Shown here piece by piece: positions 2,223-23,751 of a stretch of 64,000 nucleotides of DNA. The notes under the pieces are model-generated. The model ran no database searches. It saw only the letters and a list, made by a program, of their open reading frames with translations, and had not been told where the DNA came from. Location of the stretch: IMG/VR virus record IMGVR_UViG_3300043464_002284, positions 173,916 to 237,915 of that record; one strand, given 5' to 3'. Numbering within the stretch: position 1 is the first letter of the stretch; every line of letters begins with the position of its first letter. A program made the position numbers and the translations under genes.

Positions 2223-2295
2223 GGGGCGTTCGTCTAATGGTCTAAGACGCTAGTCTTATTAACTAGCTAAGGGAGTTCGATTCTCTCACGCCCTA
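2223..2295 (+). tRNA. tRNA-Ile(UAU), CCA not encoded
   Basis: Acceptor GGGGCGT/ACGCCCT, D stem GTCT/AGAC, anticodon stem CTAGT/ACTAG with loop CTTATTA (anticodon TAT), T arm GGGAG-TTCGATT-CTCTC. Confidence 0.8.
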
Positions 2296-2866: not shown

Positions 2867-3049
2867 ATGAAACTTCAACCACTAACGGCTATTTTTGCAG
2901 GATTATTTCTAACATCATTAGGATTTAACATTCTTTTGAATGTAGAGATACAAAAACTAAAAAAGCTGGCAAACAAACCAGCAAGAATTATTATAGAAAG
3001 AGAACCGGAAATTCACATCAAACCAAAAGTTTGGGGGTATACTAAATAG
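2867..3049 (+). CDS. Small membrane-anchored hypothetical protein
   Basis: N-terminal hydrophobic helix; stop TAG overlaps the first base of tmRNA. Confidence 0.6.
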   Translation: MKLQPLTAIFAGLFLTSLGFNILLNVEIQKLKKLANKPARIIIEREPEIHIKPKVWGYTK

Positions 3050-3400
3050 GGCTAGTAAAGGTATCGACAGGTAAAATAGATATAGATGGCATCGACTGGT
3101 TAATCGACCGGCCAGTTTAAAAGTCGATTAAAATTGTTAATTGGCGAAGTTTCAACTCTCGCTCTCGCTGCCTAATTAGTTAGGTACGAGTGGGGCGGCA
3201 TGAGCCTTATTACCAAATCATGCTGACTCCGATATTCGGATATGGTAGTCCTACCAGACATAAATAGGAATGATGATTGTACTCAATCTGACTCAGATAA
3301 TTCTGATAGCTTTGTTGGTAGTGCGATAACAACTAAATAACGATGTAGAAGTTTATATTGATGTTTATTCTGGACGCGGGTTCGACTCCCGCCTAGTCCA
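3049..3400 (+). ncRNA. ssrA: tmRNA; tag peptide (A)GEVSTLALAA*
   Basis: Acceptor GGGCTAG/CTAGTCC with G3:U70 Ala identity pair and discriminator A; T arm GCGGG-TTCGACT-CCCGC; 5' TCGAC motif; tag frame 3143-3175 ending GCT GCC TAA. Confidence 0.95.
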
Positions 3401-3408
3401 CTTATATT

Positions 3409-11599: not shown

Positions 11600-11674
11600 G
11601 GGAGCGTAGTCCAATTGGCAGCAGACAAAGGACTTAAAATCCTTCCAGTGTGGGTTCGAGTCCCACCGCTCCTA
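11600..11674 (+). tRNA. tRNA-Leu(UAA) with short variable region, CCA not encoded
   Basis: Acceptor GGGAGCG/CGCTCCT plus A; anticodon arm AAGGA-CTTAAAA-TCCTT; T arm GTGGG-TTCGAGT-CCCAC; variable region CCAGT. Confidence 0.9.
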
Positions 11675-11704
11675 CTTAATCCTTTTTAAAATGAGTTTAC
11701 TCTT

Positions 11705-14490: not shown

Positions 14491-17175
14491 ATGAAGTTGG
14501 CAGATAGGACGATTGAGACTCACAGTATTGGCGTTGCAAGCAGGAATCAGTTTAACATTGCTCAGACGAGCAAAATGTTTAAAATCCTTTCAGACTCTCT
14601 TTATTCTGATAAGGTTATGGCTGCGATTCGTGAGCTTTCTACTAATGCTTATGATAGTCATATCTCTGCCGGTAATAAGAATCCCTTTAAGGTTACTCTC
14701 CCCACTGCTGCCAATCCCACCTTTGTGGTGAGAGATTATGGCACTGGTCTTAGTCAGACCGATATGGAGGACTTGTATACAACCTACGGAGCATCCAACA
14801 AGAATGATAGCAATGATTTTGTTGGTTGTCTTGGTCTAGGATCTAAGAGTCCCTTCGCATATACCAAGAGCTTTACAACCGCATCATATTACAACGGTAA
14901 GAAGTATACCTATATTGCTGCGATTGACGAGAGCGGAGTTCCTACTCTGAATCTTTTTAATACTTCTAATACGTCTGAGCCTAATGGTCTTGAAATTAGT
15001 TTCGCTGTTAAGCAGCATGACTTCCAAGAGTTTACCGACAAGGCTAAGAGAATCTTCCACTATTTCCGAATGAAACCCATCCTTGAAGGTGGTATCGGGA
15101 ATAATCTGCAAGATCATAAGTACAGCAATACCAACATTATCATTAGTGGTGATGGCTGGAGAGTTTGCCGTCTTAATAATGACAATAGCTATTTCCCCAG
15201 CAACTACCACCGAATTGATAGTGGTATCGTAGCTATCATGGGCAATATTGCCTATCCTGTTCAGACCGCACAGATTGTGGGTCAAGAAAAGGAAGAAATG
15301 CCCGATCATATTCAGAAGTGGAATAGGGCTTTCCAGAAAGCAGATATTGATTCTTGGAAGAGCTTTGTGGGAGAGATTCTTAACTCCGGCCTTTATCTGG
15401 AACTTGATTTTGGTATCGGTGAACTGGAAATGGACGTTTCCCGCGAAGGTTTGCAGTACACCAAGGATGTTATCAAGACTCTGCGTAAAAAGACTCAAGA
15501 AATCTATATGGAGATGAAGGAAGAATTCTCCAAGAAGATTAAATCTGCTCAGAATAAGGTAGAGGCAATTACTTCATACTATACTATGAATGAATTGGCT
15601 GGCGGCTGGGGTGTTGGTGCTACTTGGACTGATCCCAAGGGCAAAGATCATCCTATCAACTCTGGCAATGACTTGGAATATAAAATTCCTGCCGGTAAGA
15701 GTCTGTACGTTTTTAATTACAAGACTGCTGGCTATCGTTCTCGTCGCCAAGTTGCTCTGACAGACAGAATCCATCACGAAACCCTTACTGGTAAAGGTTC
15801 TTATTATTGGAATAACCAGAAGAAGAAGGGTAAGATGAGTTTCTTTGTGTGCGATGTTGCCAGCGAAGAAAGTGCTAAGAAGATTCTTACAAGGTTTTGT
15901 AATGCAAATGATTGCTTTGCATATCTCTTGATTGATACTAAAGATCACACAAAAAGTCGAGAAGGTTTTGATCAACTTATCGAAGATGTTGGGGCTGAAA
16001 ATCTGCTCAAGGTTTCAGACTACAAGCATCTGACACAAAGTTCTGGCCCAAGAAAATCTTACAATAGAAATTCTAATGGTAGCGTTAGTGATCAAGACGC
16101 ATTCTTTATCCACGGTTATGATAAGGACAGTAAACAGATTACTAATCCTTATAATGACGCTACTTGTCTCAGAATTCTTTCAGAAGAACAACTAGATGAT
16201 TTTCTGGAACAGGATGAGATTGTGTATGTTCCTATGCTTCGTTATAAGACCGAACCTGAGTCTGGCTATCCTGAGATTAACGACATTGCTATTACTCTTA
16301 GTGATGATAAGCTCAAGAGCATAGTCAAGGATTTGGTTGGTGATAATAAGATTTATGCTATCAAAACAGCTTTTGCTAAAAAGCTTGAGAAAGAAGGATA
16401 TAATCTTGTTAACTTCAATGATTTCTTGAAGCGTCAACTTAAAGTTGTTGCTAACAAACACTTTAAGAATCTTGCTTCTATCAACAAGCTTGTTGAATAT
16501 TGTAAGAAAGATTTCGCAACCGACGAAAAGACCAGTGGTGGATATAGGTATTATCAGTACGGAACAACAGATAAGCAGTTTATGTTTCATATTCTGAATA
16601 TCTTTGGATTGGATTATGATAAGTTTATCGGCAATAAGACTCTTGTTGATTGCTTGAATAAAACAATGCTAACAGAGTTCTTTGCTAATACTGTTCATAT
16701 TCATCCTTTTAATATCACTAAGTTCAATCAAACAGAATACCTCTCTCATATCTCTAAGCTTATGAAAGAGGCTGGGATTGAAGATGTTGACAGTAAAGAG
16801 ATTCGTAATGCTAATTTGGCCTATAACACCTTGACAAACATGATCGTCACTCGTTTGTATTCTGTGACTAATCAAGACAAGGCAGAGGGTTATCTCAAGA
16901 TTATTCGTGGAACTTCTACTGAAGATCTTAAGAGATGGAAAATCTCTGAAATTAGGGAGAAGATTAAGTCTGAAGTAGACAAGAATCCTATGCTGAAGTA
17001 TATTATGGGAACTCATCAAGTTAGTGGTAATCTGACAGACCTAAAGCCTAGTCAGAATCCTATTCTTGAAGATCGTAGCTCGTATTATGGAAAGTCTAGC
17101 AAGGATTGGATTGAGCAGATGAGTCAAGAGAATATTGACCTATTTAAGATTCAGTTGAGTAGTTTGATCAAGTAG
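14491..17175 (+). CDS. rIIA: rIIA-like protein (GHKL ATPase N-terminus); start probably ATG 14510
   Basis: LSDSLYSDK..AIRELSTNAYD, VRDYGTGL, GCLGLGSKSPFAY; followed by rIIB. Confidence 0.92.
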   Translation: MKLADRTIETHSIGVASRNQFNIAQTSKMFKILSDSLYSDKVMAAIRELSTNAYDSHISAGNKNPFKVTLPTAANPTFVVRDYGTGLSQTDMEDLYTTYGASNKNDSNDFVGCLGLGSKSPFAYTKSFTTASYYNGKKYTYIAAIDESGVPTLNLFNTSNTSEPNGLEISFAVKQHDFQEFTDKAKRIFHYFRMKPILEGGIGNNLQDHKYSNTNIIISGDGWRVCRLNNDNSYFPSNYHRIDSGIVAIMGNIAYPVQTAQIVGQEKEEMPDHIQKWNRAFQKADIDSWKSFVGEILNSGLYLELDFGIGELEMDVSREGLQYTKDVIKTLRKKTQEIYMEMKEEFSKKIKSAQNKVEAITSYYTMNELAGGWGVGATWTDPKGKDHPINSGNDLEYKIPAGKSLYVFNYKTAGYRSRRQVALTDRIHHETLTGKGSYYWNNQKKKGKMSFFVCDVASEESAKKILTRFCNANDCFAYLLIDTKDHTKSREGFDQLIEDVGAENLLKVSDYKHLTQSSGPRKSYNRNSNGSVSDQDAFFIHGYDKDSKQITNPYNDATCLRILSEEQLDDFLEQDEIVYVPMLRYKTEPESGYPEINDIAITLSDDKLKSIVKDLVGDNKIYAIKTAFAKKLEKEGYNLVNFNDFLKRQLKVVANKHFKNLASINKLVEYCKKDFATDEKTSGGYRYYQYGTTDKQFMFHILNIFGLDYDKFIGNKTLVDCLNKTMLTEFFANTVHIHPFNITKFNQTEYLSHISKLMKEAGIEDVDSKEIRNANLAYNTLTNMIVTRLYSVTNQDKAEGYLKIIRGTSTEDLKRWKISEIREKIKSEVDKNPMLKYIMGTHQVSGNLTDLKPSQNPILEDRSSYYGKSSKDWIEQMSQENIDLFKIQLSSLIK

Positions 17176-17196: not shown

Positions 17197-17224
17197 TTGA
17201 CAAGCTTGCCGATTAGTGTAAAAT
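17197..17224 (+). promoter_or_regulatory. sigma70-type promoter for rIIB
   Basis: TTGACA-16-TAAAAT; spacer contains GCCGAT. Confidence 0.75.
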
Positions 17225-17271: not shown

Positions 17272-18141
17272 ATGGCTGTTCCGTTTATGTTTGTGGATGG
17301 TAATTTGACGCTGGTTCTTAACAACCAGAGTTATCAGGTGTTGCCGGATCATATCAACTATAAGTTGATTCTGGAAAGACTTCCTACTGCTACGGCAGAG
17401 GAACTCTTGGAAGTTGTTGATGTTCAAAAGGCTGTTGCTACTTTTAGCGATGGTCTTGTGGAGATCAAGAACGGTCAGGTTCTCTACGAGGGTGAGGAAG
17501 TTCATGGTAGTATTAGTAAGCGTATTCTGGAGTTTATGAGCAAGGGATTGCCGTTTCAGCCCCTTGTTAATTTCCTGAATAATCTCATGGAAAATCCAAG
17601 TATGCAGAGTCAGAAGGAACTGTATGATTTCTTGGAGCATGAGCATCTGCCTATTACTGAGGATGGTTTCTTCCTCGCCTATAAGGCTGTTCGTTCAGAC
17701 TTTAAGGATAAGTATAGGGGAGTTTTTGACAACAGAGTTGGTAAGGTCTGTGAAATGCAACGAGCAAAGGTAGACGATGATCGTGGTCGTGGTTGTTCTA
17801 ATGGACTTCATGCTGGAGCATTGAATTATGTTGCTGGCTATGGTAGTCTTGAGGCTGGCGACCGCATTGTGATCGTCAAGATTAATCCCAAGGATGTTGT
17901 GAGTGTTCCTAGTGATTGTAACTATGAAAAGCTCCGCACTTGTCGCTACGAAGTAGTTGGTGAGTATGAGGGCGAATTGCTCAAGCCTCTTTATAAGGCT
18001 GATTTTAGTCAGGATGATTACGAGGATGATGACGACGATTATCTAAATGACTATGATGAAAGCTATTGGGATCAGTTTGACGAAGAAGATGAGGACGAAG
18101 ATGAGGATGAGGATTATGACGATGAGGATGACCAGTATTGA
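17272..18141 (+). CDS. rIIB: rIIB-like protein with acidic tail
   Basis: LPITEDG.FLAYK, CSNGLHAG, VKINPKDVVSVPSDCN..KLRTCRYEVV. Confidence 0.92.
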   Translation: MAVPFMFVDGNLTLVLNNQSYQVLPDHINYKLILERLPTATAEELLEVVDVQKAVATFSDGLVEIKNGQVLYEGEEVHGSISKRILEFMSKGLPFQPLVNFLNNLMENPSMQSQKELYDFLEHEHLPITEDGFFLAYKAVRSDFKDKYRGVFDNRVGKVCEMQRAKVDDDRGRGCSNGLHAGALNYVAGYGSLEAGDRIVIVKINPKDVVSVPSDCNYEKLRTCRYEVVGEYEGELLKPLYKADFSQDDYEDDDDDYLNDYDESYWDQFDEEDEDEDEDEDYDDEDDQY

Positions 18142-18153
18142 TTCTTGATAGTC

Positions 18154-18236
18154 AAGGTGGTGTTTGGTAACTTGTAAGATAGCACCTATATAGTTTCTGC
18201 TATCGTACAATAACGGTTCGATTCCGTTACCATCTT
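18154..18236 (+). ncRNA. tRNA-like structured RNA (8-bp acceptor-like stem, 5-bp T arm, no canonical anticodon arm)
   Basis: AAGGTGGT/ACCATCTT; AACGG-TTCGATT-CCGTT; internal TTGTA-A-GATAGCA/TGCTATC-G-TACAA stem. Confidence 0.6.
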
Positions 18237-18296
18237 TTCCGATATTGCTTTTGATGGTAGTGTTTACTGTCCCAATATCAAAATTGTAGGTAGGAA

Positions 18297-19469
18297 GTGG
18301 AAAAAGGAAAACAAATGTTTAGCGATACTTTGGCTTTTAATCCGTTCGATAAGACTCATAGTGCTATTGGAACAAGAGATCAGATTGCTTTGCGAAATAA
18401 GTTTTTTGATTCTTTTGGTGGTCAGCAGATTTTTTGCTATAACGGTGATCCTCGTAAGAAGATCAGCAGTATGAATCATACGGATCATCTTACCACCGTT
18501 GCTATTGCAAATGATAGTCAGGGTGCTGATGCTTACTTCTATGTTAATGGTGGACGTAAGCAATATGCTATTAGTAGAATTCGTGCTTGTTTTGTTGATA
18601 TGGATGCTGGGCGAGATGATCAAGGTCGTTATTTTAAACCCAGCATCGTCATGCAGAAGAAAAAGGAATTCTTGAACCAGATTAATAACTTTCCAGTAAA
18701 GCCAAGTTGGGTTGTTGATACTCGTAATGGTTATCAGTGCTATTGGATTCTAAACCAAAACAATATAAATCCTCACAAGACCTATTGGAATGGTATTCAA
18801 AAGAAACTTGTAAATCATTTTGGTGGTGATGCCCGAGCTATTAAAATCAATCAGATTTATAGGATCCCTTATACTTGGTGGAGGAAGGGTTGGGAAGGAA
18901 AGCAGCCTTATTTTACCAGTATTTTATCGGGATCAACTGGTGATTGGGTTAATATTGAACAGCTTAAAGAAGCTCTTGATGGTGTTTCTGCTGTGGTTAA
19001 TATTGTTGCTAATAAGACTAGTGACGAATGGTTTAAGGAATATGCTAAGGCTTATAAAAGGTCTGACGTTACTGGGGTTCCGGTATCAGTTAATGTTGCT
19101 GCAACCATTGCCAATCAGATGAACTCTTTAAACCTTAACACCTATACAAATAGTACAGACGATATCAAGAAGTATAACCATTCTAAGTATGTTTATACTA
19201 GTAGCGGCGCTCTGTTCAATAAGGCTTATGGTGATCCTACTCCAGTGTCTCCTGTGACTGAGGACGATACAGACGCTCTTGAGCCGCTTCCTGTTGACGC
19301 TGGGGGCGAGGATTTAGATCTTGACGGTTCACAGACCAAGCTTTTAAAGACGGTCGTGGAGTTCCTTAATCAAGTCTCAACGCCCCTCTACTTTAGTAAC
19401 AACAGATTCTTGTCTAATGCTGCTAAAGAACTAGCCTCTAAAATTAGTGACAAGTTTTGTATTGGATGA
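18297..19469 (+). CDS. RepB-type (AEP superfamily) DNA primase domain protein; start probably ATG 18315
   Basis: CFVDMD, PSWVVDTRNGYQCYW, QIYRIPYT. Confidence 0.75.
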   Translation: MEKGKQMFSDTLAFNPFDKTHSAIGTRDQIALRNKFFDSFGGQQIFCYNGDPRKKISSMNHTDHLTTVAIANDSQGADAYFYVNGGRKQYAISRIRACFVDMDAGRDDQGRYFKPSIVMQKKKEFLNQINNFPVKPSWVVDTRNGYQCYWILNQNNINPHKTYWNGIQKKLVNHFGGDARAIKINQIYRIPYTWWRKGWEGKQPYFTSILSGSTGDWVNIEQLKEALDGVSAVVNIVANKTSDEWFKEYAKAYKRSDVTGVPVSVNVAATIANQMNSLNLNTYTNSTDDIKKYNHSKYVYTSSGALFNKAYGDPTPVSPVTEDDTDALEPLPVDAGGEDLDLDGSQTKLLKTVVEFLNQVSTPLYFSNNRFLSNAAKELASKISDKFCIG

Positions 19470-22746: not shown

Positions 22747-23751
22747 ATGGCAGCTGGATTAGACGTCGGTACAAGCTATATTGTTTTATCAAAAGAAGAT
22801 AAAAAAAGCCACATCATGTATAAAGATTTTAGAGATGCATTTTATGTCATCAAACCCACAACACCAGTTGCTACAAAAATGATTGAAAAAGGTCTTGCTG
22901 GTAAGGTTTTCATTAAAGATAGTGACGGTTCTTTTGTTCTCTTAGGTAAAGATGCGATTGAAAAAGCCATAGAGAGAAACGACACAGCAAAAAGACCTAT
23001 GTATAAGGGTGTTGTTTCCGCTAAAGAAAAAGATGCCAAAAAGATCCTGGCTTTCATCTTGAAAGAAGTTGTTGGTCAAGCCTCAGAGGAAAACGAACAG
23101 CTTGTATTTTGCGTACCTGCTCAACCAGTAGATCAAGAAGATGAAGATTTTGATGTTGGATATCATGAAGATGTGGTAAAGACAATTTTAAGAGAGTGTG
23201 GATATAATGCAAAAGCAATAAATGAAGCCGAAGCTCTTTGTTACGCTGAATTAGATGTTGAGGACTATACGGGTATTGCTGTTAGTTGTGGTGCTGGGAT
23301 GACTAATGTTTGTGTTATGTTGAACGGTGAGCCTACTGTTGTTTTTAGTACAACTAAAAGTGGCGATTGGGTAGATCGTATGAGTGCCGTAGCAACGGGA
23401 GAACCAGACAGTGTTGTTCAAGCAGAGAAGGAGGGCGGGGGTTTTGTAATAGGAGAACCCAGCGATAGTCCTGTTTTGGGTGCTGTGTCAGCATACTATG
23501 AAAGACTGATCGACTATACAACTAAACAGTTAGCTCACGCACTATCTAATCATAAATCTTTGCCAAAGTTTAAAAATCCATTAACTATTGTTGTTGCTGG
23601 TGGAACTTCGCAAGCCGCTGGATATATTGAGCAATTTGCTAAAAAACTAGAAGAGAATGGATTTCCTCTTAAAATTAAAGAAGTAAAACATGCAGCAGAT
23701 CCACTGCACGCTGTTGCTAAGGGGTGTTTGATAGCAGCAAAGGTTTTGTAA
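22747..23751 (+). CDS. Actin-like ATPase (MreB/ParM/Hsp70 fold)
   Basis: Phosphate-1 GLDVGTS, connect INEAEA, phosphate-2 SCGAGMTN, adenosine VVAGGTS, AVAKG. Confidence 0.85.
   Translation: MAAGLDVGTSYIVLSKEDKKSHIMYKDFRDAFYVIKPTTPVATKMIEKGLAGKVFIKDSDGSFVLLGKDAIEKAIERNDTAKRPMYKGVVSAKEKDAKKILAFILKEVVGQASEENEQLVFCVPAQPVDQEDEDFDVGYHEDVVKTILRECGYNAKAINEAEALCYAELDVEDYTGIAVSCGAGMTNVCVMLNGEPTVVFSTTKSGDWVDRMSAVATGEPDSVVQAEKEGGGFVIGEPSDSPVLGAVSAYYERLIDYTTKQLAHALSNHKSLPKFKNPLTIVVAGGTSQAAGYIEQFAKKLEENGFPLKIKEVKHAADPLHAVAKGCLIAAKVL

What the first reader, a model, noticed from the sequence alone, without database searches (positions are those of the whole stretch)
18154..18279. tRNA-like RNA with 8/5 acceptor-T architecture and no anticodon, after rIIB
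It has an 8-bp acceptor-like helix stacked on a perfect T arm (TTCGATT), a tiny GTT-TGGT-AAC D-like hairpin, and a 12-bp interrupted stem with a 13-nt loop in place of the anticodon arm. The 8/5 geometry is that of bacterial tRNA-Sec, but there is no TCA anticodon, no long variable arm and no CCA. A second hairpin (18241-18279) follows. It is a candidate tRNA mimic or decoy for anticodon nucleases, or a YrlA-like RNA.
Basis: partly seen in the sequence, partly recalled or inferred. Interest (0 to 1): 0.6.

Follow-up and report, generated by a model that had tools for sequence, protein, structure and literature searches.

The report
tRNA-shaped RNA element after phage rIIB
A freshwater jumbo phage and about 160 related phage contigs carry a conserved tRNA-shaped RNA with no usable anticodon arm right after the rIIB gene; it most likely marks where host tRNA-processing enzymes cut the phage messenger RNA.

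Summary
The structure is real. Window 18154-18236 (+) folds into a cloverleaf: a closing helix, a tiny D hairpin with GG, a long central arm and a canonical T arm. No Rfam family reaches its gathering score, and default ARAGORN finds nothing.

One copy lies 2-16 nt after the preceding ORF's stop in about 160 IMG/VR contigs with rIIB 77-99% identical (about 72 unique variants). That ORF is rIIB, or an inserted HNH gene.

All helices covary. The D-loop GG, the T loop UUCGAUY and the G53-C61 pair are fixed. The central arm ranges from a 12-bp stem to 13 unpaired nucleotides, so this is not a decoding tRNA. It is also not tRNA-Sec, not YrlA-like (no Ro gene, opposite topology) and not an anticodon-nuclease decoy.

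- The closing helix extends into a 5' A-rich leader and a 3' U-rich trailer.
- In about a third of variants the next gene starts 4-27 nt downstream, so transcription must read through.
- Distant relatives (PA5oct, Xoo-sp13) have a plain terminator at this position.

Best reading: a tRNA-derived "top-half" mimic used as an intercistronic processing or 3'-end signal, analogous to mascRNA and plant mitochondrial t-elements. The structure and its position are shown; cleavage is inferred. The second hairpin is real but belongs to the downstream gene.

The parts
17197..17224 (+). sigma-70-like promoter (TTGACA-16-TAAAAT, 11/12) ahead of rIIB; the likely start of the transcript that carries the element
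   Evidence: consensus scan only
17272..18141 (+). rIIB gene (289 aa, acidic C-terminal tail, stop TGA 18139-18141)
   Evidence: phrog_609 RIIB 9e-72; ORF list
18142..18153 (+). 12-nt spacer / 5' leader between the rIIB stop and the element; A-rich in most relatives, where it pairs with the U-rich trailer
18154..18161 (+). 5' strand of the acceptor-like closing helix (AAGGTGGT)
18162..18171 (+). D-like hairpin GTT-TGGT-AAC; the loop GG is invariant in all variants (equivalent to G18 G19)
18172..18210 (+). central arm: 5 bp + bulge + 7 bp, 13-nt loop CCTATATAGTTTC (18185-18197). Stems covary within a type, but the arm is replaced or lost between types
18211..18229 (+). T arm: stem AACGG/CCGTT (18212-18216 / 18224-18228), optional sixth pair T18211-A18229, loop TTCGATT (18217-18223)
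   Evidence: 4 of 5 pairs change on both sides
18229..18238 (+). 3' strand of the closing helix (ACCATCTT, 18229-18236) running into a T run (TTTT, 18235-18238)
18241..18279 (+). second, two-tier hairpin (outer GATATTG/CAATATC, inner GATGGTA/TACTGTC). A conserved 5'-UTR element of the downstream gene, not part of the tRNA-like fold
   Evidence: 23 unique variants, compensatory and G.U pairs; always found with the MFSD... gene
18336..19469 (+). downstream 377-aa ORF (MFSDTLAF...). Function unknown; weak sub-threshold RepB_primase similarity

Best explanation
The element is a tRNA-derived RNA that keeps only the "top half" of a tRNA: the acceptor-like helix, the T arm and the D-loop/T-loop elbow. 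Decoding has been lost.

It is transcribed as part of the early rIIB transcript and sits between rIIB and the next cistron. I propose that the host's tRNA-maturation nucleases treat it as a pre-tRNA. RNase P would cut at its 5' side. RNase Z or 3' exonucleases would cut after the discriminator, as they must for the phage's own CCA-less tRNAs.

This would set the 3' end of the rIIB message and create the 5' end of the downstream message. In the window that message would start at the conserved hairpin 18241-18279. In other variants it would start a few nucleotides before the start codon. A stable tRNA-like RNA of about 60-90 nt would also be released.

Shown: the fold, its covariation, its strand, its fixed position after the upstream stop codon, the leader-trailer pairing, and the need for read-through transcription. 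Inferred: the cleavages, which enzymes make them, and any role of the released RNA.
For: - **Fold and covariation:**. The + strand scores 105.6 bits against 23.5 for the - strand, and G.U pairs only make sense on + strand RNA.
- **What is conserved:** the invariant parts are the ones top-half-binding enzymes recognise (established knowledge, from memory): D-loop GG, T loop UUCGAUY, the G53-C61 pair, and a 7-9-bp helix stacked on the T stem. The central arm is hypervariable or absent.
- **Position:** one copy per genome. It lies 2-16 nt after the upstream stop codon in all but one unique variant and was found in 79 of 80 further rIIB loci. It stays next to the stop codon even where an HNH gene is inserted after rIIB.
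- **Read-through:** the downstream start codon lies 4-27 nt after the element in about a third of variants, with the Shine-Dalgarno sequence directly after the U run. There is no room for a promoter, so the element is intercistronic.
- **Leader-trailer pairing:** the A-rich leader pairs with the U-rich trailer and extends the helix, often with one irregular pair. The same arrangement is needed for RNase P processing of MALAT1-mascRNA (PMC8457004).
- **Match to the phage's own tRNAs:** all 12 lack CCA and 11 of 12 have trailers starting with T, as the element does.
- **tRNA ancestry:** the type-B model scores the phage's own tRNA-Ile at 37.4 bits.
- **Relatives:** PA5oct and Xoo-sp13 carry an ordinary terminator at the same position, so this site is a 3'-end-forming site.
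Against: - There are no expression or end-mapping data. No RNA run was listed.
- The +1/-1 nucleotides are A/A rather than the usual G/U of bacterial pre-tRNAs.
- Within each type the central arm keeps its base pairing and its loop changes little. Pure processing would not need this, so the released RNA may have its own function.
- A T run of at least 4 follows in 64 of 72 variants. That also fits simple termination.
- No bacterial or phage precedent for an anticodon-less tRNA mimic used as mRNA punctuation was found in the papers searched.
Confidence: 0.42

Rival explanations
1. The element is an elaborated intrinsic terminator or 3'-end stabiliser. The closing helix followed by the U run stops or pauses RNA polymerase. 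The compact tRNA-like fold then stays attached to the rIIB mRNA and blocks 3' exonucleases, without being cut off.
For: - An A-tract, helix and U-tract arrangement is present, with a T run of at least 4 in 64 of 72 variants.
- The scan flags 18211-18229 plus CCATCTTTTC as terminator-like.
- PA5oct and Xoo-sp13 have a classical terminator at the same place.
Against: - A plain hairpin would do the job. The invariant elbow nucleotides and T loop are unexplained.
- The downstream genes start 4-27 nt after the element in about a third of variants, and hairpin 2 starts 4 nt after it in the window, so much transcription must read through.
- Outer helix pairs covary to U-A and G-C, which interrupts the U tract in several variants.
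Confidence: 0.2
2. The element is a trans-acting tRNA mimic. Once released, the stable RNA binds a tRNA-binding protein through its acceptor/T-arm/elbow. It would act as a sponge or decoy for a host defence factor or enzyme that recognises tRNA by shape or by the acceptor end, not by the anticodon.
For: - The top-half-only conservation fits.
- The central arm and loop are maintained within types but are swapped between types, as expected under diversifying pressure.
- It lies next to rII, in a mosaic region where the downstream genes change.
Against: - No partner has been identified.
- There is no TROVE/Ro, SmpB or CCA-adding enzyme in the phage.
- The strict position next to a stop codon is not needed for a free-standing RNA gene.
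- No complementary target longer than 11 nt occurs in the phage genome.
Confidence: 0.2
3. The element is an aminoacylatable tRNA-like RNA charged with alanine. If RNase P uses its usual 12-bp ruler, the window's G18157.U18233 falls at position 3:70, the alanine identity pair also used by tmRNA.
For: - G.U occupies this position in 16 of 18 type-A and L068-group variants.
- The phage's own tmRNA also has G3.U70 and lacks CCA.
- In type B the same pair is the most irregular of the helix.
Against: - The position is A-U in L016 and L046 and G-C in L035.
- In type B it is A-U in 17, G-C in 6 and G.U in only 2 of 37 variants, so it is not a family trait.
- The true 5' end is unknown.
Confidence: 0.05
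4. The element is a decoding tRNA with an intron-like insertion. In type B the heptamer CU-CUG-GU or CU-CUA-GU looks like an anticodon loop for Gln or amber, followed by a 12-17-nt insert.
For:
- There is similarity to the phage tRNA-Ile anticodon stem.
Against: - Only 5 of 72 variants pass. Relaxed runs give 23 different anticodon assignments.
- Type A, the armless variants and the tetraloop variants cannot be read this way.
- The genome uses the standard code, with TAG as a stop in 27 long ORFs.
- No splicing system for such inserts is known in bacteria (from memory).
Confidence: 0.04
5. The element is a decaying tRNA pseudogene with no function.
For: There is no anticodon loop, default ARAGORN and Rfam do not call it, and it has tRNA ancestry.
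Against: Compensatory changes occur in every helix across about 72 variants, key nucleotides are invariant, and its position is fixed in about 160 contigs.
Confidence: 0.03

Closest known systems
MALAT1-mascRNA / MEN-beta menRNA (vertebrate tRNA-like 3'-end processing modules)
   Same: - A small tRNA-like fold with a reduced anticodon arm lies directly 3' of the RNA whose end it defines.
- An A-rich leader pairs with a U-rich trailer and extends the acceptor stem, with an irregularity near the cleavage site (PMC8457004; compare).
- In mascRNA, processing releases a small stable tRNA-like RNA; here that release is proposed, not shown.
   Different: - The host is a eukaryotic nucleus rather than a phage and bacterium.
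- There is no upstream triple-helix element here.
- Cleavage has not been shown here.
- There is no sequence relationship.
Plant mitochondrial t-elements
   Same: These are tRNA-like structures next to protein-coding genes that serve as RNase P / RNase Z signals for mRNA 5' and 3' end formation (PMC1920247, listed).
   Different: They occur in an organellar system. They are mostly partial tRNA copies without the strong family-wide covariation seen here.
E. coli secG-leuU and other mRNA-tRNA co-transcripts
   Same: An mRNA is followed by a tRNA-shaped RNA and a terminator, and RNase P separates the two (PMC2241853, listed).
   Different: There the 3' partner is a genuine decoding tRNA. Here decoding is lost and only the processing determinants remain.
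tmRNA tRNA-like domain
   Same: It has an acceptor helix plus T arm with a reduced D region and no anticodon arm. G3.U70 is present in the window's lineage, and the phage carries a real tmRNA 15 kb upstream.
   Different: The element has no pseudoknots and no tag reading frame, and G.U is not conserved across the family. In Rfam only the T arm matches tmRNA.
YrlA / bacterial Y RNAs
   Same: A tRNA-like module with a T arm and D arm.
   Different: In YrlA the RNA ends form the Ro-binding stem and the acceptor-like end is closed (from memory). Here the ends are at the acceptor. There is no Ro/TROVE gene and no Rfam match.
Bacterial tRNA-Sec
   Same: 13 stacked pairs in the acceptor/T branch and a 4-nt D loop. 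It is the best Rfam hit.
   Different: The score is 18.6 bits against a gathering score of 47. There is no UCA, no long variable arm and no 6-bp D stem, and the 8/5 count is ambiguous with 7/6.

Membership tests
canonical tRNA (RF00005) | Acceptor helix stacked on a 5-bp T stem with a T loop of the UUCRANY type and a G53-C61 pair | tested here: met
canonical tRNA (RF00005) | 5-bp anticodon stem with a 7-nt loop (U33, purine 37) and the same anticodon in relatives | tested here: not met
   The window has a 12-bp arm with a 13-nt loop. The arm is absent or a tetraloop hairpin in some variants. Relaxed ARAGORN gives 23 different anticodon calls.
canonical tRNA (RF00005) | Detected by ARAGORN or the Rfam tRNA model at threshold | tested here: not met
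tRNA-Sec (RF01852) | 8/5 acceptor/T geometry | tested here: inconclusive
   8/5 and 7/6 are both compatible. T18211-A18229 covaries.
tRNA-Sec (RF01852) | UCA anticodon, long variable arm, 6-bp D stem, score at or above the gathering score | tested here: not met
   18.6 bits against 47; sequence
tmRNA tRNA-like domain | G3.U70, tag reading frame, pseudoknots | tested here: not met
   G.U is found only in the window's lineage. There is no tag frame or pseudoknot, and Rfam matches the T arm only.
YrlA / Y RNA | Ends form a Ro-binding stem, and a Ro (TROVE) gene is present | tested here: not met
   The topology seen puts the ends at the acceptor. No TROVE gene in the genome. No Rfam hit.
tRNA-like 3'-end processing signals (mascRNA, t-elements; a functional class) | tRNA-like fold without a working anticodon arm, placed directly 3' of the RNA whose end it sets | tested here: met
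tRNA-like 3'-end processing signals (mascRNA, t-elements; a functional class) | Leader-trailer pairing that extends the acceptor stem | tested here: met
   compared with PMC8457004
tRNA-like 3'-end processing signals (mascRNA, t-elements; a functional class) | Cleavage by RNase P (5') and RNase Z (3') | not testable with these tools
   No RNA run was listed.
intrinsic (Rho-independent) terminator | Stable helix directly followed by a U tract, at the end of a transcription unit | tested here: inconclusive
   A T run of at least 4 occurs in 64 of 72 variants. However, the next start codon lies 4-27 nt away in about a third of variants.

The most novel reading that the evidence does not exclude
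The released RNA is a natural "tRNA scaffold". A conserved tRNA top half gives stability and processing. The swappable central hairpin or loop is the working part, acting as a decoy or ligand for a host tRNA-binding defence or enzyme. Its turnover between phage lineages would reflect an arms race. That would make it a new class of phage counter-defence RNA attached to the rII locus.
Probability: 0.12. Interest if true: 0.85.

Novelty: new variant of a known kind. Interest (0 to 1): 0.6.

Why it matters
tRNA-shaped processing signals are known from vertebrate nuclei (mascRNA) and plant mitochondria (t-elements). Bacteria have co-transcripts of mRNAs with real tRNAs. I found no description of a dedicated, anticodon-less tRNA mimic used as mRNA punctuation in a bacteriophage.

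If cleavage is confirmed, it would show that phages recruit host RNase P and RNase Z to shape their own early messages. It would also give a compact, naturally diversified tRNA scaffold of about 72 variants for RNA engineering. Finally, it would add an RNA family that default ARAGORN and the Rfam models missed here.

If the released RNA acts in trans, it would be a new kind of phage regulatory or counter-defence RNA.

Tried and rejected
- **Rfam.** Gathering and permissive thresholds on the window and on type-B loci gave nothing but a weak tRNA-Sec hit and a T-arm-only tmRNA hit.
- **ARAGORN.** Default runs found no call. With introns allowed, 5 of 72 variants pass. Relaxed runs give inconsistent anticodons, so the intron-tRNA reading was rejected as a family trait.
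- **Alternative genetic code or suppressor role.** Long ORFs under code 11 already cover about 200 kb of 238 kb, and TAG is used as a stop. Rejected.
- **YrlA, tmRNA partner or phage CCA-adding enzyme.** No TROVE, SmpB or PolyA_pol domain in the genome.
- **Antisense target of the 13-nt loop in the phage genome.** Only chance-level matches, at most 11 nt.
- **GATATTG as a repeated promoter motif.** Not an obvious repeated intergenic motif in the genome.
- **Expression data.** No RNA run was listed.
- **GenBank phages.** No DNA-level relatives; only the acidic-tail repeat matched.
- **More distant IMG/VR rIIB loci using a profile.** The 80 loci returned were again the close clade.
- **Covariance models on rIIB loci of PA5oct, Xoo-sp13, a 595-kb uncultured phage and a Microcystis phage.** No hit.
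- **Exclusion from one alignment.** Four type-B variants with a 6-bp T stem (L105, L107, L110, L125) were left out of alignment A4 because MAFFT misplaced their 3' strand.
- **Not used.** The large protein searches, structure prediction and complex prediction were not used, because the question is about an RNA.

Full report
**Where it lies.** The window is bases 173916-237915 of a complete 237,915-bp IMG/VR phage genome with direct terminal repeats. GC content is 37%. The genome uses the standard genetic code: ORFs of at least 150 aa already cover about 200 kb, and TAG ends 27 of them. The finding lies between rIIB and a 377-aa ORF. rIIB is at 17272-18141 (phrog_609, 9e-72). It is preceded by rIIA at 14491-17175 and by a sigma-70-like promoter at 17197-17224. 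The 377-aa ORF is at 18336-19469.

**The observation.** The minimum-free-energy and centroid folds of 18154-18236 are the same cloverleaf: -23.3 kcal/mol, z = -3.3, 1 of 200 shuffles as good. It has an 8-bp closing helix, a 3-bp D-like hairpin with loop UGGU, a 5 + 7-bp central arm with a 13-nt loop, and a 5-bp T arm with loop UUCGAUU. ARAGORN finds only tRNA-Ile(UAU) at 2223-2295 and tRNA-Leu(UAA) at 11600-11675 in the window. Rfam at gathering thresholds finds those two and a tmRNA. In a permissive local search the element's best match is tRNA-Sec at 18.6 bits, against a gathering score of 47.

**Relatives.** Searching IMG/VR with the rIIB protein gave 348 relatives, of which 80 loci were kept. 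The element is present in every locus that extends far enough. A pattern built on the D hairpin and T loop of a divergent form pulled in 95 further stretches. Nearly all lie directly after an rIIB gene 77-95% identical to the window's. In all there are about 160 loci and about 72 unique variants. A covariance model of the divergent form found exactly one + strand match just after rIIB in 79 of 80 additional loci; the last locus is truncated. Each genome searched has one copy. The other hits are its ordinary tRNAs.

**Forms of the element.**
- Type A (the window) has the 12-bp interrupted arm and the loop CCUAUAUAGUUUC.
- The L068 group has a continuous 12-bp arm.
- Type B has the D hairpin AGUC-UGGY-GACU. 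Its central arm has a 6-bp stem, an internal loop CUCU(G/A)...A(A/C/U)AC, and a hypervariable inner hairpin.
- Short forms have a 6-7-bp hairpin (L093, L130, L139) or only 13 unpaired nucleotides (L056, L080).

**Covariation and strand.** On 18 type-A and L068-group sequences, 99.4% of cells pair and 11 pairs change on both sides; no shuffle reached this in 500 tries. On 37 type-B and short sequences, 93.4% of cells pair and 19 of 30 pairs change on both sides. The covariation score is 0.312 against 0.121 shuffled, and slid controls fall to 44-51% paired. The closing helix changes sequence completely between lineages, for example AAGGUGGU/ACCAUCUU, AAAGGAAU/AUUCCUUU and GAAAAUGG/CCAUUUUU. The D-loop GG, the T loop UUCGAUY and the last T-stem pair G-C never change. 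The + strand scores 105.6 bits and the - strand 23.5. Several pairs are G.U, so this is an RNA structure on the + strand. T18211-A18229 covaries with C-G in L044 and the L068 group, so "8/5" can equally be read as "7/6". With flanks included, the helix runs on into an A-rich leader and a U-rich trailer, up to 13 bp. The four inner pairs hold in at least 35 of 37 variants. The fifth pair from the inside is position 3:70 if the innermost is 7:66, and it is unpaired in 12 of 37.

**What it is not.**
- *Not a decoding tRNA.* The arm in the anticodon position is the least conserved part and can be absent. ARAGORN with introns allowed passes only 5 of 72 variants, four of them as tRNA-Gln(CUG) with a 16-nt "intron". 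Relaxed runs give 23 different anticodon assignments.
- *Not tRNA-Sec*.
- *Not YrlA-like.* The ends are at the acceptor side, the genome has no TROVE/Ro gene, and Rfam is silent.
- *Not a tmRNA piece.* There is no tag frame or pseudoknot, and only the T arm matches. The phage also lacks SmpB and a CCA-adding enzyme.
- *Missing CCA is not informative.* All 12 real tRNAs of this phage lack an encoded CCA, and the trailers of 11 of them begin with T, as the element's does.
- *It does have tRNA ancestry.* The type-B model's best hit in the window's genome is the phage's own tRNA-Ile at 37.4 bits, above the element itself at 34.6. The match includes the anticodon-stem region.

**Context that bears on mechanism.**
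- The element starts 2-16 nt after the upstream stop codon in all but one unique variant.
- In five or six loci an HNH endonuclease gene (phrog_3106, 7e-20) is inserted after rIIB. There the element follows the HNH stop codon just as closely.
- The downstream gene differs between loci. In about a third of unique variants its ATG lies only 4-27 nt after the element, with a Shine-Dalgarno sequence directly after the U run. There is no room for a promoter, so transcription must pass through the element.
- In the window, the conserved second hairpin (18241-18279) begins 4 nt after the element. It covaries, and its G.U pairs fit only + strand RNA. It is always linked to the MFSD... gene, whatever the type of the tRNA-like element. 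This again implies read-through, and hairpin 2 would become a 5'-terminal stem-loop if the element were cut out.
- A T run of at least 4 follows in 64 of 72 variants.
- In the nearest cultured relatives (rIIB 41-43% identical) the same position holds a plain A-tract/hairpin/U-tract terminator and no T-loop motif. The covariance model finds nothing there.

**Most likely mechanism.** The parts under selection are those that RNase P, RNase Z and the CCA-adding enzyme recognise: the stacked acceptor/T helix and the D/T elbow (established knowledge, cited from memory). This, together with the context above, points to a tRNA-derived "top-half" mimic serving as an intercistronic processing and 3'-end signal. 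I rate this at 0.42.

The closest analogues are:
- MALAT1-mascRNA, where an A-rich leader pairing with the trailer and an irregularity next to the cleavage site are required for RNase P processing (PMC8457004);
- plant mitochondrial t-elements (PMC1920247);
- E. coli secG-leuU (PMC2241853).

The cleavages themselves are inferred, because no RNA run was listed.

**Rivals.** These are not mutually exclusive.
- An elaborated terminator or 3' stabiliser that stays attached: 0.20.
- A released trans-acting mimic or decoy for a tRNA-shape-binding factor: 0.20. It is supported by the maintenance of the central arm within types and its replacement between types.
- An alanine-accepting RNA: 0.05. G.U would sit at 3:70 in the window's lineage under the 12-bp ruler, but it is not conserved across the family.
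- An intron-bearing tRNA: 0.04.
- A dead pseudogene: 0.03. This is contradicted by the covariation.

**Novelty.** No Rfam family fits. The papers I could search describe no such element after rIIB or as phage mRNA punctuation. A bulk catalogue of IMG/VR structured RNAs mentions tRNA-like candidates in general, and I cannot exclude that this one is among them (PMC10690425). I class it as a new variant of a known kind, namely tRNA-like processing and mimic elements, with interest 0.6.

Noticed in passing
window 3049-3403 (+): Phage-encoded tmRNA (Rfam 91.5 bits, E 2e-36) that ARAGORN missed. The acceptor has G3.U70 and no encoded CCA. By eye, a tag frame reads ...GEVSTLALAA-stop. The phage genome has no SmpB.
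   Followed up: partly
window 2223-2295 and 11600-11675; G000 145345-185590: The phage has 12 ordinary tRNAs (Arg, Asp, Thr, Gln, Asn, Ser, Tyr, Glu, Lys, Gly, Ile-UAU, Leu-UAA). None has an encoded CCA, and the trailers of 11 of 12 start with T. This points to a host that relies on RNase Z plus CCA addition.
   Followed up: partly
L236:2381-3013 (also L237-L240, L071-L075, L078): A 210-aa HNH endonuclease gene (phrog_3106, 7e-20) is inserted exactly between the rIIB stop and the tRNA-like element. It looks like a free-standing homing endonuclease.
   Followed up: partly
window 18241-18279 (+): A two-tier hairpin conserved in 23 unique variants, with compensatory and G.U pairs. It is always linked to the downstream MFSD... 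gene, about 55 nt before its start codon. Its role is unknown; it may be a 5'-UTR stabiliser or regulator.
   Followed up: partly
window 18336-19469 (+): A 377-aa protein of unknown function (phrog_3123). It has only a sub-threshold RepB_primase hit (E 0.023) and, by eye, a CFVDMD motif reminiscent of primase-polymerases. No PDB sequence match.
   Followed up: partly
window 18185-18197: The loop contains the 8-nt palindrome CUAUAUAG. Variant L044 has CUAAUUAG, which is also palindromic. A UAGUU-like motif recurs in the central region of several types. This could allow loop-loop dimerisation or protein binding.
   Followed up: no
window 22747-23751 (+): An actin-like protein of the Volactin family (PF25216, 2.7e-62; also MreB-like).
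   Followed up: no
window 17197-17224 (+): A near-consensus sigma-70 promoter (TTGACA-16-TAAAAT) lies between rIIA and rIIB, suggesting early transcription by the host polymerase.
   Followed up: no
L098, L112, L115, L166, L174 (pattern hits): An unrelated set of phage contigs carries another odd tRNA-like sequence with the same D hairpin AGTCTGGTGACT. It has a 32-nt central region and an ...ACCTACCA 3' end, and it is not next to rIIB.
   Followed up: no
L178:2560-2680, L179:2225-2325, L181:2540-2745: In Xoo-sp13 and PA5oct, rIIB is followed by a classical bidirectional-type terminator. In Microcystis phage Mwe-JY26 it is followed by a series of GC-rich repeated hairpins.
   Followed up: partly
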